From NCBI RefSeq assembly GCF_964188315.1, contig NC_135665.1, positions 66,836,001 to 66,900,000 of the forward strand: 64,000 nucleotides of DNA. Direction: 5' to 3'. The notes below the pieces were generated by a model that was not told the DNA's origin, did no database searches, and worked only from the letters and a program-made list of their open reading frames with translations. This DNA is from Podarcis muralis. Its lineage: Eukaryota. The position numbers were made by a program, and so were the translations under genes. Position 1 is the first letter of the stretch, and each line of letters starts with the position of its first letter. This document shows, piece after piece, positions 457 through 46,594 of this stretch.

Positions 457-536
457 AGCGCTCCCGGCAGGAGGAGGAGAAAAACAGCCTCCTGGCTACT
501 GAGCTGCGGCTGGTCCTCCACGGCCTCCACAACTGA
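457..536 (+). CDS. TPM2: Tropomyosin beta chain, alternative terminal exon 9c-type (ERSRQEEEKNSLLATELRLVLHGLHN*)
   Basis: Pyrimidine tract plus ctccag acceptor at 455-456. Read in phase 1 (as for other tropomyosin exon 9 variants) it gives 26 aa and TGA at 534-536. The pattern N.LL..EL+L.LH resembles exon 9c of TPM3/TPM1 as recalled. It lies just upstream of exon 9d. Confidence 0.8.
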
Positions 537-1183
537 GCCCCTCAGCTGCCCTTGCCTGCTTCATGGGGGGGGGGGGAGCCCCTCCCCTGCCCCTCCCTTC
601 TCCCCCCTGAGAAGCCCTTTTCTTGGAGCAAGAGGATTTGGGAAGGGGGTCTCCTCTCTTGCGCGCCTTCCTGGAGGATGGGCCTCCCAGAAGAGAGGCG
701 TGGTTCCCAGTCTGAGCTGGAGAAGAGCTCAGCAGAGGCTGGGCAGGGTGGGAGCCCCTTTTGACAAGGGGTGGGGTGAATGGGACAGGATCCTGGCAAG
801 CAGCGTCTCTCCTCTCTGCTTCTCCATCTCTCCTGAACTGCTCCTCTTGCTGCTGCTGCCTTGCTCCTCTTCACGGATCGACACCCTCTTCCAAGGTGTT
901 TGGGGACCGGAGCTGACTGTTCTCCTTAGGAGCAGGTGGTGGTGAAGAGGGCAGGCCTCTGGGCAAGCAGGATGGAGGGGCCACCTCAGCTGCCCTCCAG
1001 GGGCTGGGGTGGGGGGTGGGATCTTGCTGTTGGATGGAGCCGCTGAACTGACGGGGCCTCGCTCTGTGTGTGTGTGTGTGTCTCTCTTTATCTCCTGCCT
1101 CTTTCTCTCCTGGGCTGGGGGGGTGGGCTTCCTTCTGGCGGTGGTGGGGTGTGCCTGGGTGCCTGCCTGCCTTGTGTTTGCAG

Positions 1184-1266
1184 AGAGCTTGGCCAGCGCC
1201 AAGGAGGAGAACGTCGGCATCCACCAGGTCCTGGACCAGACACTGCTGGAACTGAACAACCTCTGA
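1184..1266 (+). CDS. TPM2: Tropomyosin beta chain, terminal exon 9d (ESLASAKEENVGIHQVLDQTLLELNNL*)
   Basis: tttgcag acceptor at 1182-1183; 83-nt phase-1 exon. The peptide is nearly identical to the recalled TPM2 9d C-terminus (ETLASAKEENVEIHQTLDQTLLELNNL). CA9 and ARHGEF39 are neighbours, as at the human TPM2 locus. Confidence 0.95.
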
Positions 1267-2764: not shown

Positions 2765-3760
2765 CATAGCATTGTAGAATTGGGAGGGACCTCAAGGGTC
2801 ATCTAGCCCAACCCCTTGCAGTGCAGAATAAAACAGCTAAAGAATTCATCAGAGAGTCCGTTTCATTGTGTTAACAGCTCTTGCTCTCAGATGGTTCCTT
2901 CTGGTGTACTGTCAGTCTATAGCCGGTTGAGTTCTGCCCTGCAGAGCAGGAAAACAAGCTTGCTTCATCTTCCTTTTGACCACCTTTAGAGATTTGAAGA
3001 TGGCTCTCATATCTCCTCTCAGTCTCCTCTTTTCCAAGCTAAACATACCCAGCTCCTTCAACTGTTCCTCATAAGGCTTGGTTCCCAGACCCTCTGCACA
3101 CGTTCCAGCTTGTCAACATCCTCCTTAAATTCTGGTGGCCAGAACTGGACACTGTATTCCAGGTGTGGCCTGACCAAGGCAGAGGAGAGAGGGACTATGA
3201 CTTCCCTTGATCTGGACACTAGACTTCTGTTGAGGCAGCCTAGAGTAGCATTTGCTTTTTCTGCTGCTGCATCACACTGTTGGCTCATGTTAAGCTTGTG
3301 GTCCTAAGACCCCTGGATCTTTTTCACATGTCCTACTAATAAGCCAGATGTTCCTCATCTTATATGTGTGCATCTGGTTCTTCCTGCTTAAGTGCAGAAC
3401 TTTACATTTGTCCCTATTGAAATTCATTTTGTTAGCCTGTGCCAAATTCTCCAAGCTGTTGTGCTCATTTTGAATCTTGCTTCTGTCTTCTGTGGCACTG
3501 GCCACCCCTCCGTTTGGTGCCATCTGCAAATTGGATGAGCATCCCCTCAATCCCTTCATCTAAGTCATTTATAGATGTTGGAGGACAAGGGGCCCAGGAC
3601 AGAACCCTGTGACACCCCCACCCGTCACTTTTTTCCAGGATGACGAAGATCCATTAAAGAGTCCTCTTTGGGCTCCAGCCAGCTACAAATCCACCTAACG
3701 TTTACCTCCTTCAGCCCACATTTTACCAGTTTCCTTGCAAGAATATCATGGGGGACTTTG
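2765..3760 (-). mobile_element. CR1 LINE fragment(s): ORF2 C-terminal part and 3' end
   Basis: The minus frame reads SQQCDAAAEKANATLGCLNRSLVSRSREVIVPLSSALVRPHLEYSVQFW, typical of CR1 ORF2. A CR1 3'-end motif lies near 2770-2825. Boundaries are approximate. Confidence 0.85.
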
Positions 3761-3899
3761 TTGAAAGCCTTAGTGCTTTTTTTTATATATATACTCGCCA
3801 TGAAGTTGTTACAGGAAGTGTCAGGCTTTTAACATTTCAAAAAAGATGCCGGTACTGTGTACCCTTGAGCACCTCTCCATCCATCCCCCCAAGCAAGTC

Positions 3900-5130
3900 A
3901 AGATCCGCTCCGTCCCCCGTGTTCCTAGACGGCGCCCCCAGTTTGCCATGGGGGCGGGAGGGGGCGTGCGCTCTCCCCACGGCAAGAGTTCGGCAGCTGC
4001 AACTCCCAGCCCCCCACGCCGAGGGCCCTTCGCCCTCCCCGCCCCGCAGCTGGTGGGCACTGGTGTTCCCCTGGGCTCTGCCGCCGCGTGGCTCCCCTGC
4101 CTGCCCCCCACTCGACTCCAGTTGCCCCGCCCCGCCCGGAGCAACGGACGGGGCGCCCGCCAGCCGCGCCCGGGAACGGCACTGGGGGTCCCCCTCGTCC
4201 CGGATCGGAAGGCGCCCGGGAGCCCCTGAGCTGCCCCCGCGACGCCGCCGCCGCCGCGCCCCCCGGGCCCGAGGAGCAGGAGGAGGAGCCGCCGCCGCCC
4301 TGCCTCCGCGCCCGCCCCCGGCGCCGGCCGGGATGTGATGTCAGGCGGGCGGAAGCGGCGGGGCGGAGGCCCGGCGGGGGGCCGAGGGAGCGGCGGGGGC
4401 GGAAGCAGCGCGTCTTCCTGGGCGCCGGGACCGGCTGGGCTCGCATCGCGGCGGCGGCGACGCCCCCCGTCGGGGCTCGGTGCGCGGCCATGACCCTGGC
4501 CGTCTTCTTCGGCTGCGCCTTCATCGCCTTCGGGCCGGCGCTGGCGCTCTTCCTGCTGACGGTGGTGGCCGAGCCGCTGCGCATCATCATCCTCATCGCA
4601 GGGTCAGTGCCGGGGGGGGGGGAGGAGGACCGGGAAGACCCCTCCCCGCGGGGGCCCGGCCTCTCTCTGGGGAGGGCTCCGGCGGAGGAAGAGGGTGCCC
4701 TGGGTGCGGCCCGGCCCGGTGTCATCCCGGGGGGGGGGGTGACATCGGCGCGCCGCCCCCCGGGACTCCCCCCACCCCCGAGGGCGGCTAGCCCCGCCCC
4801 CGGTGCCCAGTATGTGCTGGAGCAGCTAGCTGCGCCTCGGGCTGCCGGTGGGCTTGGGGGGCGGGGGGCGATGCCTGGGCCCTGGGGCTCCTGGGCCAGC
4901 CCGGGGGGCGCCTGGCTGGGGGGCGCCGGTGACCTTGGCCCTCCTCTCCTCCGGCTGCAGGGCCTTCTTCTGGCTGGCCTCGCTGCTCTTCTCCTCGCTG
5001 GTCTGGTTCATCGCGGCCAAGGCCAGCGACCCGTCCAACGAGGCGCTCCAGAGGGGCCTCCTCATCTTCGGCGTCATCTTCTCGGTGCTGCTGCAGGAGG
5101 CCTTCCGCTTCCTCTACTACAAGCTGCTCA
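3900..5130. promoter_or_regulatory. CpG island / APH1 promoter and exons 1-2
   Basis: Very dense CpG with multiple GGGCGG GC boxes at about 4345-4400, upstream of the ATG at 4490. Confidence 0.85.
4490..4602 (+). CDS. APH1: APH1 exon 1 (MTLAVFFGCAFIAFGPALALFLLTVVAEPLRIIILIAG)
   Basis: GCCATGA start; donor GG|gtcagt. Confidence 0.95.
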
Positions 5131-8100
5131 GGTAGGGGCGCTGGGGGGCACAGCCTTGGGCCAGGAAAGGTCCCTTTGAAGCCGAGTCCTGCGCTGCCAA
5201 GGGGACCCTCCCTCCCAGCAACCCAGCGACAAACCCTGGGGGGGGGGGGGAGAAGCAGTGGTGGAAGCTGCAGGTGGCAAGCGAGGCCCCCCGGGAGTCA
5301 CCTCCCAACCAGCCTGATGCCAGTCCTGGGCAAAATGATGCTGCCCATGACCCCTTACGCCACGTGGATACCACAGATTGTCCAGGTGCCCATTTTTGAC
5401 CCCCAGAAAAGAAGGCCTGGCAGCACCGGGCGAAGCCTCTGCCTGAATGCCTGGACTGCTGTGGCTGCTGCCGGTCAGGGCAGGCAGTGCAGGGCCGGGT
5501 GGGTGGAAGGAGGGACGTGGGGGCACCGGGCAGCTCCCCCTCTTCCTGTCCGTGGTGGGTTGAGCAGCCACAGACAAGGGGGGCTGGTTAGGGGTTCATC
5601 CTGGAGGGAGGCTGGGGGGGCAGGGCTCTCCCCTGCCTCTTCATACTTCCTGGGACCTGTGGCAATGTTATAGATGTCAGTAATCTGAAGGAAACAAAGC
5701 TGCATGAAGCAATGTAGCGCCATGAGAAAATACAGATTAAACTGGTATATGAAGAGGCTTCTCAGAGCAGATTCTTAGGCTGAATATTGGGCCTCCCTGA
5801 GCCTCTCTGCTTGTGCATTGGAACCTCTTCCCTTCCCCGGTCATTTTGGACTGATGCTGAGGGATTCCCACCCAGGCCTGAGGGTCCCGATCCCACAGCC
5901 TCCAGCTGGGCAAGAGCATGGGAAGCCAAACCGGGAGGCAGCAAGACTGTTCTTTGCACTCCTCTTGCGCTGAGGAGGAGCTGCAGTGGAAGTCTGCACC
6001 TTGGACCCTTCCTGCTTCTTCGGCCGTCTTCACTCGGATCTCTTTGGGCTCCGACACATCTCAGCATGCGAAAGGCTGCCTTTCCCCCATAGTCTTGCCT
6101 TCCAAGGTTGCCGTCAGCGCAGTGATCCTTCCTGTTTCCAGCACTAACTTGTTGCACCCTCCCCCGACCCCCATGAGGACTGTGGGGTGGAGGAGACTCC
6201 AGGGCAAAGTGAGATCCCTGGGGCAGAGACGGTGTGGGTTGCCCCACAGTCCACCACAGGGGCTTGGCAGACGCAGCAATGGCTGCTGCGGGGGCAGAGG
6301 AGATACTGGTCTGCCTGTAGCAAGGGGTCTTTCCTGGGCCTTTGGTCCCATTGAGGCCAGTGTGCCTGTCTTGTCTGCAGGACACACCCCCCCATCCACC
6401 TCTGGAGCTCAGAGATTCCCCTCGAAGACTAATCCTGATGAGCGCCACCCGTGAGGAGCCCCATCGGGAGAGATGGTGGGCTGCCCCATGACTGCGAAGG
6501 CCAGCAGGGGGGCTTGCCTTGCCTGGACTCCAATCATCAGCTTGGCTGGGGGTTTCTTCTGTGCAGACTTTATTCTCCTGAAATCAAGTTGAAAATAGAG
6601 GCAGAAAGGAAGGGTGCCCCTCTCATGGCACCAAGACTGCAGGCTCTAGTTGTGATTCCTGCCTTGTGGAGGGGGTCCCTTGGGGGTCCCTTCCAACTCT
6701 GCAGTTCTCGGGTTCTAAGACAGGCCAAAGTGCTTAAGGTGAGAGATGCTGGAGATTTCCAGTACAAAACTCAGGATTCCTTCTCTCCCCTGACCAGGAA
6801 GGCGATTGAGGGGCTGTTGGCCCTGAGTGAAGATGGCTGCTCTCCCATCTCCATCCAGCAGATGGCGTACGGTGCGTTTCTAGAGGGCAGGGAAGAGAAA
6901 TGGGCAAAAGGCAGGCGCTCTCAGCCCAGGGAGGGAGGGAGGAAGAAAGGAGGCCCGAAGGCGGGGGGGGGGGGGTCCCGACTTCTATATCCATGGGAGG
7001 GGCTGCTTGAGCGCACCCCCCCCCGGTCCAGACAATCTGGGGCTGAGCCATCTCCCTTCTGGGAGGGAAAAGAGCAGTCCAGGAAGGGGTGGAGAAGATG
7101 GGGGAGGCTCTGGGAGCATTCCTGGTGAAATGTCTGGGTCTGAGGAGGGGGTGGGGGGTGGGGTCCCACGGTCTGACTCTGCGCACAACGGCTTCTTCCC
7201 CGCAGTGGCCGGCCTGGGCTTTGGCCTCATGAGTGGGGCCTTCTCCATGATCAACCTGCTGGCGGACTCTCTGGGGCCCGGCACGGTGGGCATCCACGGG
7301 GACTCCCAGCTCTACTTCCTGACGTCAGGTAAGGGTCTCCAGAGACTCCCCCCCCCCTTGACCCCTCTGGCCTGCCTCCTCCCTGCCTAACGGATGCTCT
7401 CTCCCGCCTCAGCCTTCATGACGCTGGTGCTGGTCCTTCTGCACACCTTCTGGGGGATCATCTTCTTCCACGGTTGTGAGACCAAGCAGTGGTGGGAAGT
7501 GGGAGCTGTGGTGCTCACCCACCTGATCGTCTCTGGCCTGGTGAGTAGCTGGAGGGCAGAGAGGGGCGCACTTCTCATGCTGCTGCTGGCCAAAAACAGG
7601 GTTCGTTCATTTATTTATTTGCTATAAAGGTGCAGCATAAAACAAACAGTATATTGCATAATAAACAAATCGGGGCAATATTTATTCTTTTATTATAAAG
7701 GAAGGATAAAAGAATAAATGGAATATAAAAGAATGGCATCAATGAAGTCAAGCTACCAAAAACAAATCCTGGGTGATAAAGGGCAGAGAAGGGAGCAGCT
7801 GCCATGGGGGGGGGGGGCAGGGGCTTGGGGCTGAGTGGTGTAGTCTTGACACTGCGCCTGCTCTGTGCCGAGCTCCCTGCCGCCCCCCCCCCCCGCTGCC
7901 AGTGACTGGCAGTGATGTGGGGCTGGGAAGGGGAGAGGGAAAGCACTGCCACCCCCTCCAGCCACCCCACGGGCTGCTATGGGGTGTCTCTTCCACACTC
8001 TCCATTCCAACTCCCTTAAGAAGTAAGAAAATGCATTAATCTAAAACATAAAGGAATAAGTGAAATAATACTGACTTGGGTCTTCCAAATTCCCAACTGT

Positions 8101-10678
8101 TCTTAACTTGCTAGTATTTGGTATTTTAATAGTTGCTTTTTAAAAAAAATGAATCTCCAGAGAAATTGCATTGAATTTGCTGTTATTTAGCTACATTTAA
8201 TTGCCAGCATAAAACAGTCTGTATCTGCCTCTCAAATAGAAAATTCAGCACTGCAAAGTCATGTCCCAGGTAAAAAGAAGAAGAGCCCCCAAAGTTTTTG
8301 TAGTCTTTATGCAAAAGTTAGAAGAACTTCTGGTATAACATTAGTATTACCAGACAGGAGAAGCAAGTTTTACAGGGGAGGGAGGCGTGTGATGGAGAAG
8401 TCTAATTGGAGCTTTGAGTGGAATCTGTAAAGCTGCTCCATGGAGGGAATCAGTCCATGTCCACAGAAAAGGAAATGCTTCGGGGGGAAATGGGAATGGC
8501 ATGAAAGGATGGGGAAGACCATGCTAGTCACTTCATGTTCAGAGGTCAAAGGAGCAGGCAGAGAAGTCTGGTGCATTGGAGAGTGGGAAAGCCAGCTGAG
8601 GAGAAGCAGCTCTCCAAAAGCTCCCTGAGGAATAGATCCTTGAAAGTCCCCAAAAAAAGGACAAACAGAGCCATTTTTACCTTGTACCCAAATGCTTCTC
8701 ATGCGGGGGCCAGTTGAAAATCCCCTGGGAGGGAGTTGCGTCAAGGGGGCACCACCACCGAGAAGGCCCTGCTTCTTGCCCCTGGGCTGCCGCCGCAAGT
8801 CAGGCCAGCCCCGCAGGAGCCCCACAGAAGGAGCTCTTGTCCCAAGCCCTGGGGTCCCAAGGTGCTCCGGGCTCTGGGTGCAACCAGCCAGGCCCAGTTG
8901 CCCACTGGGAGCCAGTGCATGCTTAGGGATCGAGGTGGATGGTGATACATCTCACACCCCCCATGATGCTCCTCTAGGATCTGGGCTTCCCACGCTCTCA
9001 GAGAGGTGCCCCTTTCCACACTCCGGCGTCCGCCATGGTGCATTCATGGAGAAACCCATTCAGGAAGCAGCAGCCAGCTCCCAACTGTGCTGGGGGGGGG
9101 GGGGAGAGAACGGGCTGGCCCCAGACTTGGCCCCCCCCGTTCTGCTCTCCCACCCTTCCCTGCCTCTCCTGTCCCATCTGCCGAAGACCCAGCATAGGCG
9201 CTCCTGGGCACCTTCTGCCCTCACCTGTGCCGAGAGAGCTCTGAGGCGGCTTCCTGAACCCAGCACTTTGGTCATGGGGAGCTCAGGCGCTGTATTGGAG
9301 AGGTGTGTGTGTTGACACCCCCCCCCTTGATCTAGGCCAGCACACCTGAAGCAAGGTGAATGGAGTGTCTGGGTCACCATGAAAGGGGGCCGTGATGGTC
9401 CTCTGAGGGGCCTCCCCCCCCCCCACTGCTGGCAGCCAAAGGGTGAGGCAGGTCTGAGATACTTCTTCCATTCAGTTGTCAGGCCAGCAGAAATCTGAAC
9501 AGGCCAATTCTTAGATGACGGGTAGCAGCAAGTTCTCAAGGACATGCTAAAAATCCTCAAAAGACAAGAAAAGCAGCAGCACATTTGAGAACTATCCTGC
9601 AAAGGAGAGAATGGAGAAGTTTCATTCAGAATGAAACTCAATTCCTCCCCTTCTTCACCTTACATTTAGCAAAAAGAGATTCAAAATCCTAGGTTAGAAT
9701 CAGAGTTGTTGCTGAAAGGGGACCCCAAAGGTCATCTAGCCCAGCCCCCTGCAGTGCAGGAACCAGAGCTAAAGAATCCCTCACAGATGACCACCCAATC
9801 TCTGCTGAAAACCTTCCAAGGCAGGAGATTCCACCACCACCCAAGGGAGCCTTTTGACTACAGTCATAGCTCATACTATGTTTGCTTCATGATACGTTTT
9901 TTCAGGTTGCATCCCGTAGCGACCCGGAAGTACTGGCAAGGGTTACTTCCAGGTTTTGCCGCTCACACATGCGCAGACGCAGCGAATTGCAACCTGCGTG
10001 TGTGCAGACGTGCTGCTGTGGGTTGCGTTCTATTCATGTTGCGAACGGGCCTCCGGAACGGATCCTGTTCGCAACCAGAGGTACCACTGTACATCTGTTG
10101 ATGCAGCCTTGAATAGCATTAATCCTTTTTGCTGCTGCATCACACGGTGGACTCATGTTAAGACCCCTGGATCCTTTTCACATGTTTTGCTGGCAAGCCA
10201 GGTGTCCCTCATTGTGTCCATTTGTGCACTTGGTTCTTCCCGTCTAATTGCAAAACCTGACATTTGTCCCTATGGAAATGCCTTTTGTTAGTTCTTCCTC
10301 CAGAAGCATTCACTTCCCCTCCCTGTTTGTCTGCTGCAATGTGATGTTGTCTCCCTTCCTGCAGACGTTCTGGAACCCGATCTACCTGGGGAGCCTCCTC
10401 CCTGCCTACCTGCTCATGGCAGGTGCTGCCGTCTGGGCCTTCCACGTCTCTGGCGGCTCCAAAGAGAACCTGCGCCACTTCCTCCTGTGTAAGTATGGCC
10501 AGCCACACCCATCGTCACCCTGGCTCCAAGCAGCAACCCACCCAGAGGCCTTTGGCTCTCCCTGGAGGTGGCCCCTCCATCTCCTGGGGCTTGAGGTCCC
10601 AGGCTCTTTGCCTCTGACCCCCCCCTGTCTGTTTCCACAGGCCTGCGGAGTGGGACAGCGCCACCGCCCGGATCCTGA
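4490..10678 (+). CDS. APH1: Gamma-secretase subunit APH-1 family protein, 7 exons, 256 aa (paralog identity unresolved)
   Basis: Exons 4490-4602, 4961-5131, 6798-6871, 7206-7328, 7413-7540, 10365-10488 and 10641-10678 (113+171+74+123+128+124+38 = 771 nt). All introns are GT-AG and the frame is continuous. It keeps the GxxxGxxxG motif (GLGFGLMSG), GPGTVGIHGDS, and the two intramembrane His (LLHTFW, LTHL). Confidence 0.96.
4961..5131 (+). CDS. APH1: APH1 exon 2 (AFFWLASLLFSSLVWF...QEAFRFLYYKLLR)
   Basis: ctgcag acceptor; AG|gtaggg donor; 171 nt. Confidence 0.95.
6798..6871 (+). CDS. APH1: APH1 exon 3 (KAIEGLLALSEDGCSPISIQQMAY)
   Basis: gaccag acceptor; G|gtgcgt donor; 74 nt. Confidence 0.93.
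7206..7328 (+). CDS. APH1: APH1 exon 4 (VAGLGFGLMSGAFSMINLLADSLGPGTVGIHGDSQLYFLTS)
   Basis: cccgcag acceptor; AG|gtaagg donor; 123 nt. Confidence 0.95.
7413..7540 (+). CDS. APH1: APH1 exon 5 (AFMTLVLVLLHTFWGIIFFHGC...LTHLIVSGL)
   Basis: cctcag acceptor; TG|gtgagt donor; 128 nt. Confidence 0.95.
9861..10089. mobile_element. Tc1/mariner-type MITE inserted in a CR1 fragment (APH1 intron 5)
   Basis: Termini TA|CAGTCATAGCTC ... GAGGTACCACTG|TA with TA duplication. CR1 sequence lies on both sides (about 9680-9860 and 10095-10300). Confidence 0.75.
10365..10488 (+). CDS. APH1: APH1 exon 6 (TFWNPIYLGSLLPAYLLMAGAAVWAFHVSGGSKENLRHFLL)
   Basis: cctgcag acceptor; T|gtaagt donor; 124 nt. Confidence 0.94.
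10641..10678 (+). CDS. APH1: APH1 exon 7, coding part (CLRSGTAPPPGS*)
   Basis: tttccacag acceptor; TGA at 10676-10678 in frame; AATAAA at 11157. Confidence 0.8.
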
Positions 10679-11156
10679 GACCCCGCTGGGCTCCCCCGCC
10701 CTGTCCTTTGGAGCCATTTGCTGAGGCAAGGAGGACGCAGCTGCTGTGCCTTTGGGAGTGCTTCTGGGCCCGAGGAGGGGGCCGCTGGACTTGCCCCCGA
10801 AGCCCCTCTTGGGGCGAGTTGCCGTAGAAGGTCTGGGCACAAGGGGCGCTGCAGCAGAGCTCCTGGACCCTGTGAATCTGCAGCAAAAGCCCCCTCCCTC
10901 CAGAGAGGGGTTTCTGGCCAGCTGGTGTTGTTTAAATAGGGGGTGGGCTTTGGGGGTGCTGGGCGAATGACAGGTGCCGGCATAGGGTGTTGGGGGGGTG
11001 AGCATCTGTCTCTGTGGGGTGGGGGTGCAGAGGGAGAGCCAGCTGTGTGGTCTGCTTAGAGAAGAGAGGGGATCGGGGTGGGGGTTACTGGGGAAGGGGG
11101 AGTGCCCCACATGGCCTCTTTCTTTCATGGGGGGCACATCTCTGCACATTTGTACT

Positions 11157-11162
11157 AATAAA
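11157..11162 (+). terminator. APH1 poly(A) signal AATAAA
   Basis: Canonical hexamer about 480 nt after the stop, followed by GT-rich sequence. Confidence 0.8.
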
Positions 11163-11364
11163 AAGGCTGGATGAGGCCCACAGTGTGCGTACCTGTCTGG
11201 GCAGTGGTGGGGTTGATGGTGCTACACTGAGGGAGGGGGGCTTCAGAGAGGGGGCTGCATCTTCTGAGAAATAGGGCTGGGTTGGCTGCTGGTTGCTTCA
11301 GGGGCTCCTCCTGTTCAGATTGTGTTTCTGGGGGCGGCAAGATGTCCTTTGGTGTCCTTCCAGT

Positions 11365-11860
11365 CTGATGAGAAACGGTTGAGGGGGCTGGTTTTGTTTA
11401 GCCTGGAAAAGAGGAGACTGAGAGGAGATAGGAGAGCCATCCTCAAATATCCCAAAAGGGAGCAAGCTTGTTTTCTCCTGCTCTGGAGGGTAAGCTTCAA
11501 ACCAATGGCTTCAAGTTACAAGAAAGGAGATTCCAGCTAAACCTCAGGAGGAACTTTCTGGTGTCTCCCTCTGCAGCAGTGTTTCCCAACCTTTGGCCTC
11601 CAGCTATTTTGGACTACAACTCCCATCTTCCATGGCCACTGGTCTTGCTAGCTAGGGATGATGGGAGTTGTAGTCCAAAAGCAGCTTGAGACCCAAAGTT
11701 GGGAAACGCTGCTCTGGAGGATGTGGATTCCCCTTCCTTGGGGGTTTTTAAGCACAGCTTGGATGGGCACCTGCCATGGATGCTTTAGTTGAAATTCCTT
11801 CATTGCAGAGGGTTGGGCTAGATGCCTCTCAGGGTCCCTTCCAACTCTACAGTTCTATTA
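11365..11860 (+). mobile_element. CR1 LINE 3' fragment, interrupted by a hAT MITE
   Basis: Starts with CR1-like tttagcctggaaaagaggagactgaggagat and ends with the gggtcccttccaactctacagttcta 3' motif. Confidence 0.8.
11577..11711. mobile_element. hAT-type palindromic MITE
   Basis: Terminal inverted repeats CAGTGTTTCCCAAC / GTTGGGAAACGCTG; 8-bp flanks ctctgcag / ctctggag (7 of 8 match, a TSD). Confidence 0.85.
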
Positions 11861-19600: not shown

Positions 19601-21771
19601 TTGGAGGTGTGACCGTCCTGAGGCAGAACTCTCAGCTAAGCCCAGCAACAGGCTCCCTTACCAGGTGGTTGAGCCCCTTCTGGGCTGTGGAGCATCGGGA
19701 AGCTGGCCAGGACACTCCGGCCCTGCAGACTCTGAGGCAAGCGGAAGTTGTCCTGGATCAGCTCGTCCTCATCTCCATGAAGGGTGTCCTCCAGCAGAGA
19801 GATCTGAAATGAGAAGGCACAGGTCATCGAGATGGAACATCGGACAGAAAACAACACTCCCAAGGATCCAAAGACAGACCTACTGTAGAGGGGAGTCCAG
19901 CAAATCACAGAATCATAGAATTGTAGGGTTGGAAGCACTCCCCAGGGTCATCTAGTTCAACGTCCTGCAATGCAGGAATCACAGCTGGATCACCAGACCA
20001 CACACTGTGATAGAGAAGCAAGGCAACATGCAGGGAACCGTCTTCCTACAAGACAACCCCTCTGCATGTTCCTCCACCCAGACAGACCTGATCTGGGGAC
20101 AGCTGAATTGTCTGGTTAAAGATCGTCCAGTTCACCGTCTGGTAACAAGGTGGAGTGGTCAGTGAGCCATTATAGCGGAAGTAGCGACTGAGGTCGTCAG
20201 GAAGGAGCATGGCTACATCAAAGGCAGGAATCCAGGTTTCTTCTCCTGGGAAAGGAAAGGAGGGGAGGGTGGTCTATAGCAAAGGGACCCAGAACATCCG
20301 CTTTGTTAGACGGCCCCAGAGAGTTCCAGTAACAAGTCTGTGTGTGAGAAAACACAATGCACAATCTAACACACCTCATGGGCCTTTTTCCTAAATGGAC
20401 AAACCCTAAACATTGTGGCCTCTCCTCCTTGGGGAGTTGCTCCAGCCCCAAAATATCTCAGGTCCCAAAACATCACGAGGTGCGCCCCCCCAAAAAAGTG
20501 CAAATGCAAAGCAGAACCCCTGCCCAAAGGGGCTGGAGCCCAGGGAGAGGCAGCCCTGACTCCCCATGGCCCAGCACCCACTCTGCACCCATAGAGTCTT
20601 GCAGGAATCTTGATTTCCCTAGACAAGGCAAAGCAAAAGCAGCCCAGCAAGAGCTGACAGGCTGGATGAGCATCTTCTGCCCATGGGCTCCTTGCAGCAC
20701 CCCTTGCTCTTACCTTCCTCATGGACATCATTCAGATGGTCAAGGATGTGCTGATATGGCTCGTTTTCCTCCGACCCAACCTGGAATGGCAGTGGAAAGG
20801 GCTCTTGAGAGCTCTGAGTGGGGCCGTTTGCACCTCTCATGAGCTGGTGCAGGTGGATGTCTCCAACGCAGCCCCCTCCCACTGCCCCAGAGCGCAGGAG
20901 GAGCTGCTCAGACCCCTTGCCCCCTCTTTCTGCCCCCGTCACCTGCAGAAATGCAGCCAGCACAGCCAAGCCTCCGGGCTCGACTTGCGCCTCCTGGATG
21001 GTCTCAAAGTGGGAGCTGTAATAAACCACATGAATCTGGAAGCAGAAAGAGAGAAGAGCCATGAGTCCCTCAAAAGTCCCATCTGGACCTTCTCCAGCAG
21101 CTCAAGAAGTCAGGCAGTGTTTCACTTCATACAGTATGTTTATAGAATGGCATTATGATATTGGTAGCTTTATTTTCCTATATTCCTCCAGGGATGGCCA
21201 TCCTACTTTCAGGATTTCTTCCTGAGGTTCAGAGGCATCTAGCTGGCAGCTTTGGGGCAAAGAATGCCGGATTCAATGGACCATTAGCTGAATTCAGCAA
21301 GTTTTCAGCTGGAAAGTCTATGCAAAATCATCTATGGCTCTGACCGGGTGGAATGCTCAGTCCCAGGAGACTAGGGCCCTGCAGGATTTAACCTTCTTCC
21401 ATCGGGCCTGTAAGACAGAGCTATTCCACCTGGCCTTTAATTTGAATTCAGCCTGATCTTTTATTTCCCTTCTCTTCCCTCCCCCCCCTTTTCTGAAGAT
21501 TACCCACTTTGGGACCCCACAGCTAATTCTCCCCTGGCCACCTCACTGGCCCAAGTAGAACTAATTCAGCCAGCTAGCCCTGGTGACTATCTAATGCTTA
21601 TTGGATGGATTTCCCCCAAATTGATTTTTGAACTTTGAATTTTATTGTTATTCATGTTTTTATACTGTTATTTTATGATGCTTCTATGTTGTATTACAAT
21701 TAAGTGTTTTAAATTTGTTGTTAGCTGCCCTGAGCCCGGTTTCTGAACCAGGAAGGGCGGGGTATAAATAA

Positions 21772-21805
<34 letters not shown>

Positions 21806-24800
21806 TACCTATAAACCCAAAAGGTGAAATCAATGGCTGCTATTTTAAAAAAATAAATACCTGTGCTTACCTGATATTATTATTTGTACTGTCATCATGG
21901 TCATTATTATATGACATCATACACTATTTTTATACTCTTCGATTGCGATACTGCCCTCATTGTTATGGATTAGACTGGACTGGTGAGCTTCCCTCCAAGG
22001 CATTTTTTTTGGGGGGGCTGTAAATATCATAAATCCAGCTGTGCTGCCCCCTCCACCGCCAAACTTTGGGCCCCCAGATCAGCCAAGGGCCTGGGGGGGT
22101 CACCAGCACCCCCTCCTGTCAGGTCTGTGGATCAGGAGGACTGGGGATTCTTATTCGACCTACTCACAAGCCACCTGTCTGCAGGAGACCCTCTCAAAGC
22201 AGCCAAGCAAGAGGCCAGAAGCAGGCGGGAGCCGCGCAAGACTTACCTCCCCAGCATAGCGGTGCCCATCCACTGTGTGCTCAGAGCCGGGCTTCAGGGC
22301 AGACCCCCAGTGCAAGTGCAGCTGGGCAGCCTGGTACGGCTGCGAGAATCCCCCGCCGGTGAGGGTCAAATTCCTGGGCAGGTCGAGGACCACTGCGGGG
22401 GGGGGGGGGGAGTAAAGTGGAGAGACACTCAGGATGAGAGGCTGCTGCTTCCTTCTCCTTCTCTGCATGCTGGAGACAGAGCTTCCCTCCTTGGCATCCT
22501 TTGCACCAAGGGCACCGCTCAGGCAAAACTCACAAGGCGCCTGAGGGCAGAGGGCTCTGGTGCTCAGCTCCTGCTTCTGGCTGGCGAAGGGGAGAGCAGG
22601 ATGCTGGAATGGATGGGTCCTATTGGGCCTGATCTAGCAGGGCTCCTCTTATGCTCTGAAGTGCCTGCTGGGCACCTCATCCACTTCGTCTTCTCACCAA
22701 AGGGAAGCCTAGAAACAAGCAGGACCTGAGGGCAAGTTCAGCCACTCTCTCCCCAGCCATTGGCATTCAGAGGCACTGACTCCTCTGGCAGCGCAGGCAG
22801 AGCACAGTCCTCATGTCTAGTGGACATCAGTAGGTTTCTCTTCCATGAATCCCCCCCCCTTGGGTGGGTGGCCATTACTCTGGGCAAAAGTTGTAAGGAA
22901 AATGGGCGGGGGGGGGCACACAGTGAGTTCCGTCAGCTTTTCTGCCTTCTCTGCAGGCCGCTGCTTGCACTGCACAGGGAAGTCAGTCAGAGGAGGAGAC
23001 CCCCTTCCGACAGCCGGCACAGTTTGGGCAGAAGTGCTGGCACTCGCACGCTGAGGCATCCAGGGATAGGTGTCTGCAGGTGGCATTGCAATGGCAAATG
23101 TATTCCCAGGTGCCCCCCCCCCCGCCACTGGGTGAGGGTCTGCAGCTGGCCTAATTCCACACCCCTGACCCCACACAGACCTTTGCATCCAAGGGATGGG
23201 GTGAGATTAAAAATTCCCCATCTCATTTGGATACTTTGACTTCTTTGCCAAATTGATAGAAAGAGACACCGGTTTCTGGGGTGGGAAACTTGGCGGGAGG
23301 CCCCTTCTCCTGCCTCTTCTTGAGAGCTACAGCTGCTGCTTTTGTGGCAGAGGCAAGACCTTCCGGCAAAGACTTTCTGGGCTGCGCAGCAGAGCTCCTT
23401 GCGCTGCCTCTCTCTCCAGGAAGAGGGAGGAGCTGGAGGCTGGGTCTGTGGCAGGTGCCTCTGGGACTCAGAGAGGCCCCTGAGGACCTTAGCCTAAATG
23501 GCGGGCCTCTTTCTCTTAATTTTCAAATAAAAGCATACAAATACCAACTCACATGTCATGCAGATTTTTGTACAATTCAAGTTTATCCCACCTTAAACTG
23601 GTGGGAAAAGATAGCAGACATTCATATGAGTGATCAACCTGCCCCCCCCCCCAGTCCATGGAAGCCCAACTGAAGGGAGGAGAAGATCAAGAGGCTTCTC
23701 AGAATAGAACCAAGTGAAGGAGGGCCTGTGGGCAAAGGCACAGCTTCAGCAATGAAGGAAGGAAACTCGACTACTGGCCAAGAGCAAGAAGATGTGGGCC
23801 CTTCTCACTTGCCTGAACAATCATGGCTGCTCCTTCCTTCCTTCCTTTTTCTTTCTTTTACAGCAGGCTCTTGTCACTACAGAGCCCTGCTCAGTCTGCA
23901 GCCCACAGGAGTTTCCAGATTCGCCTCTGCTTCCTGCCTATGCAATCGCTTTGCAAGGGCACCTGTGCATTTGCTCAGCTTTGCTCAACTTTCTATTCTT
24001 TTCCACTCCTGTCACCAACAAGGTTTGCAATCTGCCTCATATTTGCATCAGTCAAACATGTTGAAGGCAAAAACTTTGCATTCCTCCATCCAAACCAAAC
24101 TGACCCAGAGTAGACTTTTTTCAGACTTTGCTGGACTCCAGTCCACTCAAAAAATAGGCAGAGAGGAAACCTGCTTTGCTGCACAGCACATTGTGAAAGG
24201 AGATCGTGAGCAGAAAGATGGCATAGCTCAGCAGTAGAGCCATCTACAGTATAGCACAGTGGTACCTCGAGTTACATATGCTTCAGGTTACAAACTCCAC
24301 TAACCTGGAAGAGTTACCTCGAGTTGAGAACTTTGCCCCAGGATGAGAACGGAAATCATGTGCCAGCTGCACAGCAGCAGCAGAAACCCCATTAGTGAAA
24401 GCACTCCTCTAGTTAAGAACAGTTTCAGGTTAAGAACAGACCTCCAGAACGAATTAATTTCGTAACTAGAGGTACCACTGCACTGTGGATCTGCCCCCCC
24501 CCCGTTATAATTCAGAGGGTCTCCCCTCAGAAGGAGCCTCTGTCTCCAGTGACTTCATGTGACGGTGGCAGTGACCCTGGTCCCATCCCTAGAGATGGCC
24601 GAGAGCAAATGCCAGGGAGAGTGGGCAGGGCTTTCTGAGCGAGATGGGCCAAGATCAGCACTTGGTCTTTCTAAGGCCAGAGCAACCTGGCAATGGAAAA
24701 CTTGCCCAATTTGTCCAGGGATCAAATTGCCTTGGCTGCCACATCTGCTGGAGAGAGTCCCAGCTCCTTATCAGTTTGTTCCCCCCACCCCACCCCCTGC

Positions 24801-30800: not shown

Positions 30801-33800
30801 TCTCCTTTTGTTCAGGGCTTCCATCTTGTTCTACCTTGTGGCAGGTGGGAGTCCTGTTGCGACAGTCTTCAATAAAGACCAAGCCTACTGGCTGCTGTTT
30901 TGCTCTGGGATTCCTGGCTGGTGTCCTTGTTTTTTTTGTCCAAGGGAGCCCTCAGATTTCTCTGTTAACACACAGCTATGACAAAGTGAATTAAGCAGAA
31001 TGGCTGGTGAAAGATGGGGGCTCCCCAAATTTTGGCCTTGCATTGGGGGCTGCTGAAATTTGAAAGACCAAAGTCCACCTCTGACTAGATCTTTGACGAG
31101 GAAGAGAAGTGGTCAGCTACTGTAACGCCTTCTGCTGTCCTGGCTCTGTCCTGCCTTCTGGTGCATTTCTGAGCCCAATTTAAAGTGATGGCTTTAGCCT
31201 TTAAAGCTGTAAACCGTTTGGGCCCAAGTTATCTAATGGCCTGCCTGCAGCACACACTATCAGCCTTCCCATGGGCTGAAGCCCTCTGCATGCGCCCAAC
31301 TCCTAGCTCAGTGCTGTTGGTGTCCATGAGAGAGAGGACTTTCCCTGTGGTGGCCCCCATGCCTTTGGAACTCCCTGCTGGTGGTTCTGAAGCAGACTCG
31401 GCCGCCCGTTCACCTTTGGGGAGGCGTTGAAGTTTCTCTTATGACCAGCCTGTCCTTGAGAAATGCCCTCTGGCTCAGACTGTGGGTTGCTGAGCTGTGG
31501 AAAATGTTTTAATTGCTTGGCTGAATATCTTTATTGGTTTTTTTATCTTGGGAAAGTAGGGGATGGGGAGGAAATGGAAGTTTTTTCTTTTTGTGTGTGT
31601 TGTTGATCCTTTTGTAAATGTTGACTGTTGCAAGCCCCCTTGGACAGGCGCTTTAAGGAAAGGGCTGAGAAACATTTTAAGTGAATAAACCATTGAATAA
31701 TAAGAAGGGTTGGAGTGCCGCATGACAGCCACAGGTTTGAATCTAGGTTCAGATATGAAGTCCCCTGGGGGGCTTCCCCCTGGCCGGGGGGAGGGGAGCC
31801 ATAACAAGGCAGAACTGGAACATCAACAGAGAAGCAGCTCCACCTGCCAAAGGCTGCCTGGACTTCGCCATAATTGGAAGCTGTGCCAACCTGTGGGGGT
31901 GCCCCTTGCCAGCCTCATGAAAATCCCAAAGGGTTGAGGTGCCTCCCTGCCCGCTGGTGTTTCCTGGGTGTGGCTGGGCATGGGCAGGTAGGGGTCTCAC
32001 CTGTGTGTCCATTGTTCTGGAGGCGGAGCTTCTCCCTGGGAGGCAGGCTGTAGTCAGGCAGCAGGATGGGCTCCAGCTGGGGACTGAAGAGGGCGGCCCC
32101 CGTCTCAATGTTGATGGGGGACTGCATGTGGCCCCCGCAGTGGGGGAAATCAGAGGCCCACTCTGCCTTGTCTGAAAGAGGAGGGCAGGCATCAGGGGAG
32201 GGGAGGGGCTTTTCCTTCTAGCTGCTTGTGGCCCATCTTGGGGGTTGATGAGGTCGACCTTGAAGAAGCCCTTCACCCTCATCCTGACGTTGTTGGGGGA
32301 TAAACTAAGAGGCCATCAAGGACCCCAGAGATGAGAGACGAGAGGCTCAACTTCTCCTGTCTTGCCCTTGTTGCAAAGTGGCTTCCTGGCACCTGCTTCC
32401 CTGCTATCACTCCCCCCCCCCCAAGCTGGGCCCCACACACCTCCGCGCTGAGCCAGGCCTTCAAGGGCACGTGCCAAGGTTGCTCTCCTCCCCAAGGCAA
32501 ACCGGCTGAATCTCAGAAGCAGCCGGTTCCCACAGGGCAAAGTGCCAGCAGAGGCACCTGAGCTTCCTGCTGGGGGAGGAGGGGGCCAAGGAGTGCCAGA
32601 GCCACGGAAGGCGGCTCTGGGGGCCCAGCCTCACGGGAGATGGTGGCACCTGTTCTGTGGCTGCAGAGGACTCCAGGTCCACCGCTGTGCCCGACTGAGC
32701 TGGGGGACCAACAGGACTGACTGGCAAGAGGTCTTTGCCCCCACTCTCATTGAGCCAGACCCAGACCCACCTATGCAGGCCTTGGGGTGGTGCTGATCAG
32801 GCCCAGGGAGAGCAGGGCAGCTGGCTCTGCGTGAGAGGGAGGCAGCAGGGAGCTGGCTAATCATTAAGCCCCACAGCGCCTGTTTTCTGGCCAGAAGCCT
32901 AGAGGAGAGGGAGGGGCAGCCTTCACCGCCAGCCTTTACCTGCATAGCTCCAGTGACTGTTTCCATGGCCGGGAGGAAGACCTGGAAAGAGAAAGGGAAG
33001 CCAGGGATCAGGAAGTCTGAAGGTTCTCCAGCAAGGCTCAACAGCTGCTTTACCGGCTCCCACCCTCCTGGTGAGCCTCTGGTGGAGGGTCAGGCATTAT
33101 CCTGGGAAAGGGTCCTCTACTCCCATCCCATGCAACCCCACTGCATGGCAAAGGTGGGAGAGTGCCAGGAGCCTACCAGGCCCTACCTGGTAAGGCAGCT
33201 TGGCTACCAACCAAGTTACCTTCCTACCTAGGCCAGGTATAATCCTGCTTGCCTCCAAAGGGAGGCCGGGTGGTCCAGAGAAGAGAGGTGAGTGGCTGCT
33301 CCTCCCTCCCTCCCTCCCTGCCTGCCCTTCCCCCTCCCCTGCTCACCTGCACTCCACACCTGGCTCCGTTTCTATGGTAATGGGGAGGCCAGGTCCCCAT
33401 AGCCAGTCAGGCAGCCTCATGTATGGCAGGAGAGGCAAGTGGAAGAATATATGGGAGCCTTTTATGGCTCTTTTCTCATGCTGAAAGTTTTTCACAGACA
33501 TCTTCTCAGTAACTCTTACAACCCTGTAAAGTAGTCCAACAGGATTATTCTTGTCCTGCTGAAGGAACAATGGGAGGGAGAGATTCTTGCGAAAATTCCC
33601 CTCTTGGGTCCACGACTGGGCTGAGATTTCCCCTGGAGGGCTTCTGGGCAAGCACTCAGGCACTGGGGCCCCCTCCCATGAGGCTGTTGGGGCACTTGTC
33701 CCAATAAGCACTTTCAGTTCTTAGTTCAGGGCCCTCTGTTTAGATGGTGGTTCCTTCCTAATCTCCTGCATGACTGCAAAGAAAACTCTGGGCTGTGCCC

Positions 33801-41199: not shown

Positions 41200-41650
41200 T
41201 GCCTCAGTGAGCAACCTGGCCACTTACTTCTGCCCCACCTGACAGTTGGTCATCCAACATGTGCTTAAAAACCTCCAAGAAAGGAGAGTCCACAATCTCC
41301 TGAGGGAGTCTGTTCCACTGTTGAACAGCTATTACCATCAGAAAGTTTTTCCTGATGTTTAGTTGGAACCTCCTTTCTTGTACCTTGAATCCATTGGTGA
41401 GTTATACCCTCCAGAACAGCAGAAAACAAACTCATTCCAACTCATTCCCCGTGACAGCCCTTCAGATATTTGAAGATGGCTGTTGTGTCTCCTCTTTTCA
41501 AGGCTAAACATACCCAACTCTTTAAGCTGCTCCTTATAATGCTTGGTTTCTAGACACTTTATCATCTTGGTTGCCCTCCTCTGCACACCTTCCAGTTTGT
41601 CAATATCCTTCTTAAAATGTGCTGCTCAGAACTGGACACAGGACTCCAGT
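41200..41650 (-). mobile_element. CR1 LINE fragment
   Basis: Minus frame [12 protein letters not shown]...[13 protein letters not shown]. Confidence 0.85.
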
Positions 41651-44295: not shown

Positions 44296-44822
44296 CAGTA
44301 ACACATGGCTCTGCCAGCTGCAACCATCCCTGGGCAGAGAGAAATTGGAACGCTAAATAAATAAATCTGCACTGCCAATATATTTATTTTTAATCATGGT
44401 TTCTTTTCCTTCAGAAAACGGATGCAACCTTGATCCTATGAAGAGGGAAGGGCTGGTCAATAAGGCAGGACAAAGATCAGTACAAAGCAAAGGTGAGATG
44501 GGCTGGAAACCAGGAAGGAGGGCAGAAAAGACCTGCTTCTGCTCCTTGGGAAGGAATGCCCATCAAATTTGTGGGGGCCCAGCCCCCTCAAACATTTTAT
44601 TGTGGGGGCCAAAGCCCTCACAGCCCATAGGAGTTGGCTCCTATGAGATGAACAAATATAGGATGGGGGACACCAGCCTTCCTAGTAGTGAGAAGGATCA
44701 AGAAGTCTAGACCACAAGCTGAAGAAGAGTCAGCAGTGTGATGCAGCAGCAAATAAAGTTAATGCTGTTCTAGGCTGCATCAACAGAAGTATAGTATTCC
44801 ATTCAAGAGAAGTCATGGTACC

Positions 44823-46359: not shown

Positions 46360-46594
46360 ACCAAGCCTTATGAGGAGTGGTTGAGGGAGCTGGGTATGTT
46401 TAGCCTGGAGAAGAGGAGACTGAGGAGATATGATAGACATCTCCAAATATCTCAAGGGCAGTCACAGGGAAGATGCAGCAAGCTTTCTTTCTTCTGCTCT
46501 GCAGTGTAGGACTTGATCAGCTAGAGCCTGATGAAACACCAGGATGAACTTTTTGACAGAAAGAGCTATCTCAGTCAACCTAGCAGTTGGAAAG

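What the first reader, a model, noticed from the sequence alone, without database searches (positions are those of the whole stretch)
4490..10678. Candidate third vertebrate APH1 ohnolog between TPM2 and CA9, where mammals have none
Seen in sequence: an intact 7-exon APH1 gene with a CpG-island promoter, GxxxG motif and both intramembrane His, lying between the TPM2 3' end and the CA9 3' end. Established (from memory): humans have APH1B in the TLN2-TPM1-APH1B-CA12 block (15q22) and APH1A next to CA14 with TPM3 nearby (1q21), while TLN1-TPM2-CA9 (9p13) has no APH1. Rodent Aph1c is a tandem Aph1b copy and is unrelated to this. The protein is a mosaic against the recalled human paralogs. It is B-like at the N-terminus (MT.AVFFGCAFIAFGPALAL..EPLRII; SSLVWF; GLGFG.MSG; DSLGPGTVG). 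It is A-like in LQ.GLLIFG..SVLLQE and in the 74-nt exon 3 (EGL..LSEDG.SPISI.QMAY). Its C-tail (CLRSGTAPPPGS) resembles neither. Inference: this is the whole-genome-duplication sister of APH1A and APH1B, kept in sauropsids and lost in mammals. That would mean an additional class of gamma-secretase complex, and databases may mislabel it APH1A or APH1B.
Basis: partly seen in the sequence, partly recalled or inferred. Interest (0 to 1): 0.85.

Follow-up and report, generated by a model that had tools for sequence, protein, structure and literature searches.

The report
Third ancient APH1 gene in lizard
This wall-lizard gene is an intact, expressed copy of APH1, a scaffold subunit of the gamma-secretase protease, and it belongs to a third ancient vertebrate APH1 lineage that sharks, fishes (zebrafish included), some amphibians, reptiles and birds keep, that was not found in mammals, and that databases label inconsistently as APH1A or APH1B.

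Summary
A 7-exon, 256-aa APH1 gene lies at 4490-10678 (+), behind a CpG island. All splice sites are GT-AG. It sits between a tropomyosin 3' end (exon 9d) and a convergent CA9-like gene.

RNA-seq confirms every junction. The protein is identical to Podarcis muralis RefSeq "Aph-1b-like". It keeps G122/G126/G130, H171 and H197, folds like human APH1A/B (TM 0.87/0.85), and is under purifying selection (dN/dS 0.04-0.16).

ML trees put it outside the well-supported APH1A and APH1B clades. It falls in a third group ("X") with members from chimaera, skate, bichir, sturgeon, gar, teleosts, coelacanth, lungfish, caecilian, salamanders, turtles, crocodilians, birds and squamates. No mammal appeared in X. 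Zebrafish Q4V8Q7 is an X member. The TPM–APH1X–CA9 order recurs in three lizards, a penguin and milkfish.

Caveats:
- X monophyly is only moderate (84/40 and 63/87).
- One alternative topology is not rejected (AU p=0.11).

- The lineage is far wider than sauropsids.
- Squamates, birds and crocodilians seem to lack true APH1B, so this lizard has A + X, not three genes.

The gene is annotated but misnamed. I found no paper describing the lineage. The scan had not noted it before.

The parts
3751..5000 (.). CpG island spanning the presumed promoter, exon 1 and the start of intron 1
   Evidence: GC 0.67-0.82 and CpG observed/expected 0.77-0.89 in 500-nt windows. The transcription start site was not mapped.
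4490..4602 (+). APH1X exon 1, coding part (ATG at 4490)
   Evidence: GT donor at 4603. RNA-seq loose ends at 4960 spell the last 30 nt of this exon.
4961..5131 (+). APH1X exon 2 (171 nt)
   Evidence: AG/GT sites. Junction to 6798 has 98 and 52 reads. Matches human APH1A residues 39-94.
6798..6871 (+). APH1X exon 3 (74 nt)
   Evidence: AG/GT sites. Junction to 7206 has 132 and 61 reads.
7206..7328 (+). APH1X exon 4, holding GxxxGxxxG (G122, G126, G130)
   Evidence: RNA reads carry G at 7268, giving Ala141 instead of the assembly's Ser141.
7413..7540 (+). APH1X exon 5, holding His171 and His197
   Evidence: The 84-nt intron 4 and the 2824-nt intron 5 are both spliced out in RNA.
10365..10488 (+). 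APH1X exon 6
   Evidence: junction to 10641 has 183 and 104 reads.
10641..10678 (+). APH1X exon 7, coding part, ending in TGA; tail LRSGTAPPPGS
10679..11180 (+). Presumed 3' UTR, with AATAAA at 11157-11162
   Evidence: Signal located. RNA depth continues to the end of the stretch laid, 10699. The poly(A) site itself was not mapped.
1183..1266 (+). Last coding exon (9d type) of the upstream tropomyosin gene, TPM2 by inference
   Evidence: The peptide ESLASAKEENVGIHQVLDQTLLELNNL followed by a stop. The same exon lies upstream of the orthologous APH1 gene in Zootoca, Hemicordylus, penguin and milkfish.
457..536 (+). Tropomyosin exon 9c-like segment
Evidence: An open frame at 366-533 reads ...ERSRQEEEKNSLLATELRLVLHGLHN.
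20049..20273 (-). Open frame holding a CA9-like exon (..[22 protein letters not shown]..)
   Evidence: 71 bits to human CA9 against 62 for CA12/CA14.
20622..21101 (-). Open frame holding a CA9-like exon
   Evidence: The best PDB matches are all CA9.
22163..22633 (-). Open frame holding the CA exon with the QLHLHWG zinc-site motif
31918..32217 (-). Open frame holding the CA exon with the QSPINIE motif (start of the catalytic domain)
   Evidence: By alignment to the Zootoca locus, where a 468-aa carbonic anhydrase is annotated, the 3' end of this gene falls near 15.3 kb.

Best explanation
This is a functional gene for an APH1 subunit of gamma-secretase. APH1 is the seven-helix scaffold that first binds nicastrin and then recruits presenilin and PEN2.

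The gene is not the ortholog of mammalian APH1A or APH1B. It belongs to a third paralog group, here called APH1X, that arose before the radiation of jawed vertebrates. The most likely origin is the early vertebrate genome duplications, with the neighbouring tropomyosin and membrane carbonic-anhydrase genes copied as part of the same block: APH1A with a CA gene, APH1B in the HERC1 region, APH1X with TPM2 and CA9.

APH1X was found in cartilaginous fishes, ray-finned fishes including zebrafish, coelacanth, lungfish, caecilians, salamanders and all sauropsid groups sampled. It was not found in mammals. In squamates, birds and crocodilians true APH1B seems to be absent, so APH1X is probably their only non-A APH1.

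What is shown: gene structure, transcription and splicing, sequence constraint, retained key residues, predicted fold, tree position and local synteny.

What is inferred: assembly into active gamma-secretase, any functional difference from A- or B-containing complexes, the whole-genome-duplication mechanism, and the gene losses.
For: Gene and expression:
- Intact 7-exon CDS with canonical splice sites.
- All five junctions inside the laid stretch have 52-183 stranded reads per run in two raw-read RNA-seq runs. The exon 1-2 junction is seen as loose ends.
- Protein identical to RefSeq XP_028604638.2.

Family and function:
- Pfam Aph-1, 305.8 bits.
- AlphaFold model with pLDDT 86.8 matches human APH1A chain 5a63_C (TM 0.87/0.91) and APH1B chain 8oqz_C (TM 0.85/0.91).
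- G122, G126, G130, H171 and H197 are kept. Q83, E84 and R87 are invariant across 50 homologs. PMC2713549 reports that H171 and H197 are needed for complex assembly.
- dN/dS is 0.0035/0.085 against Zootoca and 0.069/0.42 against Hemicordylus, with identical exon lengths.

Phylogeny:
- A (100/100) and B (98/99) exclude the gene. X is recovered as one group at 84/40, and A+B as sisters at 89/82.
- A second taxon set gives A 97/90, B 95/99 and X 63/87. Zebrafish Q4V8Q7, lungfish and sturgeon fall in X, and zebrafish Aph1b falls in B.
- The AU test rejects coelacanth-plus-tetrapod X joined with B (p=0.008).
- All three types were found in coelacanth, caecilian (Geotrypetes) and turtles. Among cartilaginous fishes the three types are spread over species: Callorhinchus has X and B, Heptranchias has A and B, and Amblyraja has X.

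Synteny:
- Tropomyosin 9d exon, then APH1X, then a convergent CA9-like gene, in the window, Zootoca, Hemicordylus and penguin and milkfish.
- P. muralis APH1A lies on another chromosome next to a carbonic-anhydrase gene. Milkfish APH1B lies next to a HERC1-like gene.
- PMC6354393 treats APH1 as a family of a 1R/2R paralogon whose second member is chicken chromosome Z.
Against: Tree support is uneven:
- Monophyly of X is only moderately supported (84/40 and 63/87).
- The single hagfish sequence joins X in one tree.
- Four of the six residues that mark X (K58, A59, R95, A121) are shared with hagfish. They are therefore probably ancestral states rather than shared novelties.
- A tree in which coelacanth-plus-tetrapod X is sister to all APH1A is not rejected (AU p=0.109).

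Absences are indirect. 'No mammalian X' and 'no squamate, bird or crocodilian B' rest on what was missing from the 120 best rows of protein-database searches, not on inspection of the genomic intervals.

No biochemical evidence shows that this protein enters a gamma-secretase complex.

The human gene maps were recalled from memory, not tested.
Confidence: 0.85

Rival explanations
1. The gene is simply the lizard ortholog of mammalian APH1B, as RefSeq's names suggest, moved from the TPM1-CA12 region to TPM2-CA9.
For: RefSeq names it 'Aph-1b' or 'Aph-1b-like'. The N-terminus and the GLGFG motif look B-like. No separate squamate APH1B was found.
Against: The APH1B clade (98/99 and 95/99) excludes it. 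The AU test rejects joining it with B (p=0.008). Turtles, caecilians, coelacanth, chimaera, bichir, milkfish and zebrafish have both a true B and an X. The TPM-APH1-CA9 position is shared with a teleost. The gene scores higher against human APH1A than against APH1B.
Confidence: 0.03
2. The 'third group' is not one ortholog group. Slowly evolving, ancestral-looking APH1 copies from different lineages are lumped together. For example, tetrapod X could be sister to APH1A while fish X is something else, so this would not be a single conserved ohnolog.
For: X monophyly is weak (84/40 and 63/87). The hagfish sequence falls inside or beside X. The residues that mark X are mostly shared with hagfish. 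The AU test does not reject coelacanth-plus-tetrapod X joined with A (p=0.109).
Against: The unconstrained ML tree recovers X as one group in both taxon sets. The same tropomyosin-APH1-CA9 order and orientation occurs in milkfish, penguin and three lizard families. Within X the branching follows the species tree: cartilaginous fishes, ray-finned fishes, then coelacanth, lungfish and tetrapods. Coelacanth, caecilian and turtles each have exactly one copy of A, B and X.
Confidence: 0.1
3. The gene is a decaying or non-functional duplicate, or an annotation artefact, with no role in gamma-secretase.
For: There is no biochemical data for this protein. The cytoplasmic tail is poorly conserved.
Against: The frame is intact and the exon structure is conserved in three lizard families. 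dN/dS is 0.04-0.16. Spliced, strand-specific RNA is abundant: mean depth in the bins that hold exons was about 35-150 with about 12% of each run read. All tested functional residues are kept. The protein is 65-89% identical across the X members aligned, from cartilaginous fishes to lizards. The fold prediction is confident.
Confidence: 0.02

Closest known systems
Human APH1A (gamma-secretase subunit, PDB 5a63 chain C)
   Same: Pfam Aph-1 family, about 63% identity, same seven-helix fold (TM 0.87/0.91). Same GxxxGxxxG motif, His171/His197 and Q83/E84/R87. Also followed by a convergent membrane carbonic-anhydrase gene in lizards.
   Different: It falls outside the APH1A clade (100/100). The same species has a separate 265-aa APH1A on another chromosome. 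It is shorter (256 aa) and lacks the long A-type C-terminal tail. It has K58, A59, R95, A121, M134 and S232 where A has other residues.
Human APH1B (PDB 8oqy/8oqz chain C)
   Same: Same family and fold (TM 0.85/0.91), about 59% identity, similar length, and a B-like N-terminus and GLGFG motif.
   Different: It falls outside the APH1B clade (98/99), and the AU test rejects union with B. True B orthologs coexist with X in turtles, caecilians, coelacanth, chimaera and fishes. The genomic neighbourhood differs: TPM2-CA9 rather than the HERC1 region.
Rodent Aph1c
   Same: It is also called a 'third' APH1 gene.
   Different: Mouse Aph1c nests among the placental-mammal APH1B sequences in the tree and is a recent rodent copy (PMC2713549). 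It has nothing to do with this ancient lineage.
Zebrafish Q4V8Q7 / NP_001025300 (named 'APH-1A' or 'Aph-1b-like')
   Same: It is a member of the same X group: it groups with the other teleost X sequences at 100/97 and has the X-typical short length of 253 aa.
   Different: It shares about 65% identity with the lizard protein (where it is the 25th row of the alignment). Its 21.5-kb gene had no called neighbours within 10 kb, so local synteny was not seen for zebrafish itself.

Membership tests
APH-1 family (Pfam PF06105), gamma-secretase scaffold subunit | Full-length match to the Aph-1 profile above the curated cut-off | tested here: met
   305.8 bits against a cut-off of 25.6, covering residues 2-238.
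APH-1 family (Pfam PF06105), gamma-secretase scaffold subunit | Seven-helix membrane fold of solved APH1 chains | tested here: met
   AlphaFold model (pLDDT 86.8, pTM 0.84) matches 5a63_C at TM 0.87/0.91 and 8oqz_C at TM 0.85/0.91. The next-best hit has an E-value of 0.056.
APH-1 family (Pfam PF06105), gamma-secretase scaffold subunit | Conserved GxxxGxxxG in TM4, polar His171 and His197, and Q83/E84/R87 in TM3 | tested here: met
   All are present. Their functional roles are taken from PMC2713549.
APH-1 family (Pfam PF06105), gamma-secretase scaffold subunit | Assembles with nicastrin, presenilin and PEN2 into an active protease | not testable with these tools
   This needs co-immunoprecipitation or rescue in Aph1-null cells.
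APH1A ortholog group | Falls inside the clade that holds mammalian APH1A | tested here: not met
   The A clade (100/100 and 97/90) excludes it. A looser sister relation of tetrapod X to all of A is not rejected (AU p=0.109).
APH1A ortholog group | Is the only A-like gene of the genome, at the APH1A locus | tested here: not met
   P. muralis has a separate 265-aa APH1A on a 43-Mb chromosome, next to a carbonic-anhydrase gene.
APH1B ortholog group | Falls inside the clade that holds mammalian APH1B | tested here: not met
   The B clade (98/99 and 95/99) excludes it. The AU test rejects union with B at p=0.008.
Third gnathostome APH1 paralog group (APH1X) | Members in cartilaginous fishes, ray-finned fishes and the coelacanth/lungfish/tetrapod lineage, alongside A and B in the same species | tested here: met
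   X and B coexist in Callorhinchus, Latimeria, Geotrypetes, turtles, Erpetoichthys, Chanos and Danio. A, B and X all occur in Latimeria, Geotrypetes and turtles.
Third gnathostome APH1 paralog group (APH1X) | Conserved position between a tropomyosin 3' end and a convergent CA9-like gene | tested here: met
   Seen in the window, Zootoca, Hemicordylus, penguin and milkfish. Not visible for gar or zebrafish, where the 10-kb flanks held no called gene.
Third gnathostome APH1 paralog group (APH1X) | Strongly supported monophyly | tested here: inconclusive
   Recovered in both ML trees, but only at 84/40 and 63/87. The hagfish position is unstable.
Third gnathostome APH1 paralog group (APH1X) | Origin by whole-genome duplication (ohnolog) and absence from mammals | not testable with these tools
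   Consistent with paired APH1-CA neighbours in two loci and with the paralogon of PMC6354393. No mammalian X appeared among the 120 best hits.

The most novel reading that the evidence does not exclude
Reciprocal paralog loss. Mammals lost APH1X. Squamates, birds and crocodilians lost true APH1B and run gamma-secretase on APH1A plus APH1X alone. Turtles, tuatara, caecilians, coelacanth, cartilaginous fishes and many ray-finned fishes keep three types. APH1X complexes would then form a distinct class of gamma-secretase with their own substrate or processivity profile. 'APH1B' or 'APH1A' results from chicken, lizard and zebrafish would not be transferable by name: zebrafish Q4V8Q7, unnoticed in the zebrafish Alzheimer reviews I read, would be an X gene able to mask aph1b loss.
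Probability: 0.4. Interest if true: 0.65.

Novelty: new member of a known kind. Interest (0 to 1): 0.5.

Why it matters
Gamma-secretase heterogeneity (PSEN1 or PSEN2 combined with APH1A or APH1B) shapes amyloid-beta profiles and drug side-effects. The field counts two APH1 genes, plus a rodent copy.

A third, equally old and slowly evolving APH1 in most non-mammalian vertebrates has three consequences:
- **Orthology by name is unreliable.** The same bird protein cluster is called APH-1A, Aph-1b and Aph-1b-like. The zebrafish member is named APH-1A or Aph-1b-like.
- **Zebrafish knock-downs may be buffered.** The two zebrafish Alzheimer reviews I read list only aph1b or aph1. An uncharacterised paralog could compensate for aph1b loss.
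- **Natural comparisons become possible.** Lineages that apparently run on A+X (lizards, birds) can be compared with lineages on A+B (mammals) to ask what the APH1 subunit contributes.

This is gene-family bookkeeping rather than a new mechanism. The gene is already in RefSeq, so the surprise is moderate.

Tried and rejected
Work-around for the query. The spliced protein had no reference at first. I searched with an open frame that contains exon 1. Later I found the identical stored protein P0421.

Steps that gave nothing:
- P0152 (Callorhinchus X) is not on record for a genomic look-up.
- Gar X, turtle B and zebrafish X span 21-22 kb and had no called neighbours within 10 kb, so they add nothing on synteny.
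- The locus next to P. muralis APH1A holds only the 3' exons of the carbonic-anhydrase gene. I could not show from sequence that it is CA14.
- Notes of this scan held nothing on APH1 or carbonic anhydrase in this genome.
- Eight literature searches found no paper that describes a third non-rodent APH1. Only PMC6354393 uses the family as a paralogon marker, and its figure is not readable here.
- Rfam and tRNA scans of the window and of the intron-5 repeat found nothing.

A test that did not come out as hoped. The AU test of coelacanth-plus-tetrapod X joined with APH1A was not significant (p=0.109), so that alternative is not excluded by sequence alone.

Readings rejected: relocated APH1B, sauropsid-specific duplicate, and pseudogene. 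See the rival explanations.

Full report
**Observation**

Reading 4000-11200 and splicing the seven proposed exons gives a 771-nt frame of 256 codons. The exons are 4490-4602, 4961-5131, 6798-6871, 7206-7328, 7413-7540, 10365-10488 and 10641-10678. Every intron begins GT and ends AG.

The start codon lies in a CpG island at about 3751-5000, with GC 0.67-0.82 and CpG observed/expected 0.77-0.89. Exon 2 alone matches human APH1A and APH1B residues 39-94.

The spliced protein is identical over all 256 residues to RefSeq XP_028604638.2, 'gamma-secretase subunit Aph-1b-like' of Podarcis muralis. The window therefore comes from that wall lizard or a near-identical genome, and NCBI's pipeline called the same model.

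**Transcription**

Two stranded raw-read RNA-seq runs of the same species were laid on 4700-10699. They show junctions 5131>6798, 6871>7206, 7328>7413, 7540>10365 and 10488>10641, with 52-183 reads each and almost no intronic depth. Loose ends at 4960 spell the last 30 nt of exon 1. All six introns are therefore supported.

The reads differ from the assembly at five coding positions. Four are synonymous. One changes Ser141 to Ala141, the residue that Zootoca, Lacerta agilis, P. lilfordi, P. raffonei and an earlier P. muralis RefSeq version have.

**Protein**

- It matches Pfam Aph-1 at 305.8 bits.
- It scores 341.6 bits against human APH1A and 291.3 bits against human APH1B.
- G122, G126, G130, H171 and H197 are kept. 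Q83, E84 and R87 are invariant in a 50-sequence alignment. PMC2713549 reports that H171 and H197 are needed for assembly with nicastrin and presenilin.
- An AlphaFold model (pLDDT 86.8) superposes on 5a63 chain C (TM 0.87/0.91) and on 8oqz chain C (TM 0.85/0.91).
- Against Zootoca, dN/dS is 0.0035/0.085. Against the cordylid Hemicordylus it is 0.069/0.42. All seven exon lengths are identical in both.

Function as a gamma-secretase scaffold is inferred from these points. It was not shown.

**Neighbours**

Upstream on the + strand an open frame ends with the tropomyosin exon 9d peptide ...AKEENVGIHQVLDQTLLELNNL. Calling it TPM2 rests on my memory of the four human 9d exons and on the CA9 linkage.

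Downstream on the - strand, alpha-carbonic-anhydrase exons at 20-32 kb score best against human CA9: 71 bits against 62 for CA12/CA14. By alignment with the annotated Zootoca locus, the 3' end of that gene lies near 15.3 kb.

**Relatives**

Three database searches and one search of cluster representatives gave three kinds of vertebrate APH1.

- **This gene's kind (X, 249-264 aa).** Found in squamates, alligator, birds, turtles, salamanders, a caecilian, coelacanth, lungfish, bichir, sturgeon, bowfin, gar, teleosts, skate and chimaera.
- **The B kind (about 258 aa).** Found in mammals including platypus and a marsupial, turtles, tuatara, caecilians, coelacanth, sharks, chimaera and ray-finned fishes.
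- **The A kind (about 265 aa).** Found in mammals, lizards, alligator, turtle, cuckoo, newt, caecilian, frogs, coelacanth and a shark, plus very divergent bowfin and conger copies.

Two absences stand out. No mammal or frog appeared among X in the 120 best rows. No squamate, bird or crocodilian appeared among B, although their A and X proteins, which score lower, were listed.

Names are inconsistent. One 90%-identity bird cluster carries 'APH-1A', 'Aph-1b' and 'Aph-1b-like'. Zebrafish Q4V8Q7 is 'APH-1A' or 'Aph-1b-like'.

**Trees**

A careful ML tree of 70 proteins (LG+C20+F+G4 by PMSF), with Trichoplax and unnamed distant homologs as outgroup, gives:

| Group | Support (ultrafast bootstrap / SH-aLRT) |
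|---|---|
| A | 100/100 |
| B | 98/99 |
| A+B as sisters | 89/82 |
| X as one group | 84/40 |

Within X, the cartilaginous-fish, ray-finned-fish and coelacanth-plus-tetrapod subclades are each starred.

A second set of 67 proteins dropped the long branches and added zebrafish, lungfish and sturgeon. It gives A 97/90, B 95/99 and X 63/87, with the hagfish beside X. Zebrafish Q4V8Q7 is in X and zebrafish Aph1b is in B.

The AU test gave two results. Holding coelacanth-plus-tetrapod X together with B is rejected (p=0.008). Holding it together with A as a sister group is not rejected (p=0.109).

The six residues that mark X are K58, A59, R95, A121, M134 and S232. Four of them are shared with hagfish, so X looks like the conservative copy. 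That explains its weak stem.

**Synteny**

The order tropomyosin 9d exon, then APH1X, then a convergent CA9-like gene recurs in:
- Zootoca;
- Hemicordylus and Humboldt penguin;
- milkfish.

P. muralis and P. lilfordi APH1A sit on another chromosome, followed by a convergent carbonic-anhydrase gene. Milkfish APH1B lies next to a 4873-aa HERC1-like gene.

PMC6354393 lists APH1 among families that define a 1R/2R paralogon. In that paralogon the member that maps to human 9/8/5/18 is a single chromosome, Z, in chicken. Its figure could not be read.

**Reading**

The gene is a functional APH1 of a third, pre-gnathostome paralog group. It is best explained as an ohnolog duplicated together with its tropomyosin and carbonic-anhydrase neighbours.

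- The lineage is nearly pan-vertebrate outside mammals.
- This lizard probably has A + X rather than three genes.
- Monophyly of X rests on moderate tree support plus synteny.

**Novelty**

The gene is annotated in RefSeq. I found no paper that names or studies the lineage. The two zebrafish Alzheimer reviews I read list only aph1b or aph1. I rate it a new member of a known kind, of moderate interest.

Noticed in passing
window 9900-10100 (intron 5 of the APH1 gene); similar pieces near 3223-3435, 11365-11556, 41238-41649, 44646-44824 and 46360-46567: An interspersed repeat with very high RNA depth on both strands and many loose ends, so it is transcribed from many other copies. It is not a tRNA gene and matches no Rfam family.
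   Followed up: partly
window 7268: The assembly has TCT (Ser141). All RNA-seq reads of two runs carry GCT (Ala141), the residue of other lacertids and of an earlier RefSeq version. This is an individual variant or an assembly difference.
   Followed up: yes
window 6387-6870: In one RNA contig set (run X9, a more divergent sample) the last ~410 nt of intron 2 are contiguous with exon 3 and spliced on to exons 4 and 5. This is either a retained intron or an alternative first exon.
   Followed up: no
window 62376-62894 (+): A single open frame encodes a full-length FANCD2OS protein (Pfam PF15124, 261.6 bits), about 30 kb beyond the carbonic-anhydrase gene. I did not check whether this is its usual neighbourhood or a retrocopy.
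   Followed up: no
window 51352-52239 (+): A reverse-transcriptase open frame (Pfam RVT_1, 114 bits), probably a LINE fragment.
   Followed up: no
   Followed up: partly
proteins P0408 (Amia) and P0289 (Conger): Ray-finned-fish APH1A copies sit on very long branches (1.3 and 2.2 changes per site), whereas X and B of the same fishes are conservative. APH1A seems to evolve fast in these ray-finned fishes.
   Followed up: no
trees: The stem of placental-mammal APH1B is long (0.31-0.33), whereas platypus APH1B has a terminal branch of 0.013. APH1B may have accelerated in therian mammals, which lack APH1X.
   Followed up: no
bird X genes: Many bird APH1X genes sit on scaffolds of 75-88 Mb. Together with PMC6354393 this suggests Z linkage, and hence a sex difference in gene dose. 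This is an inference and was not checked.
   Followed up: no
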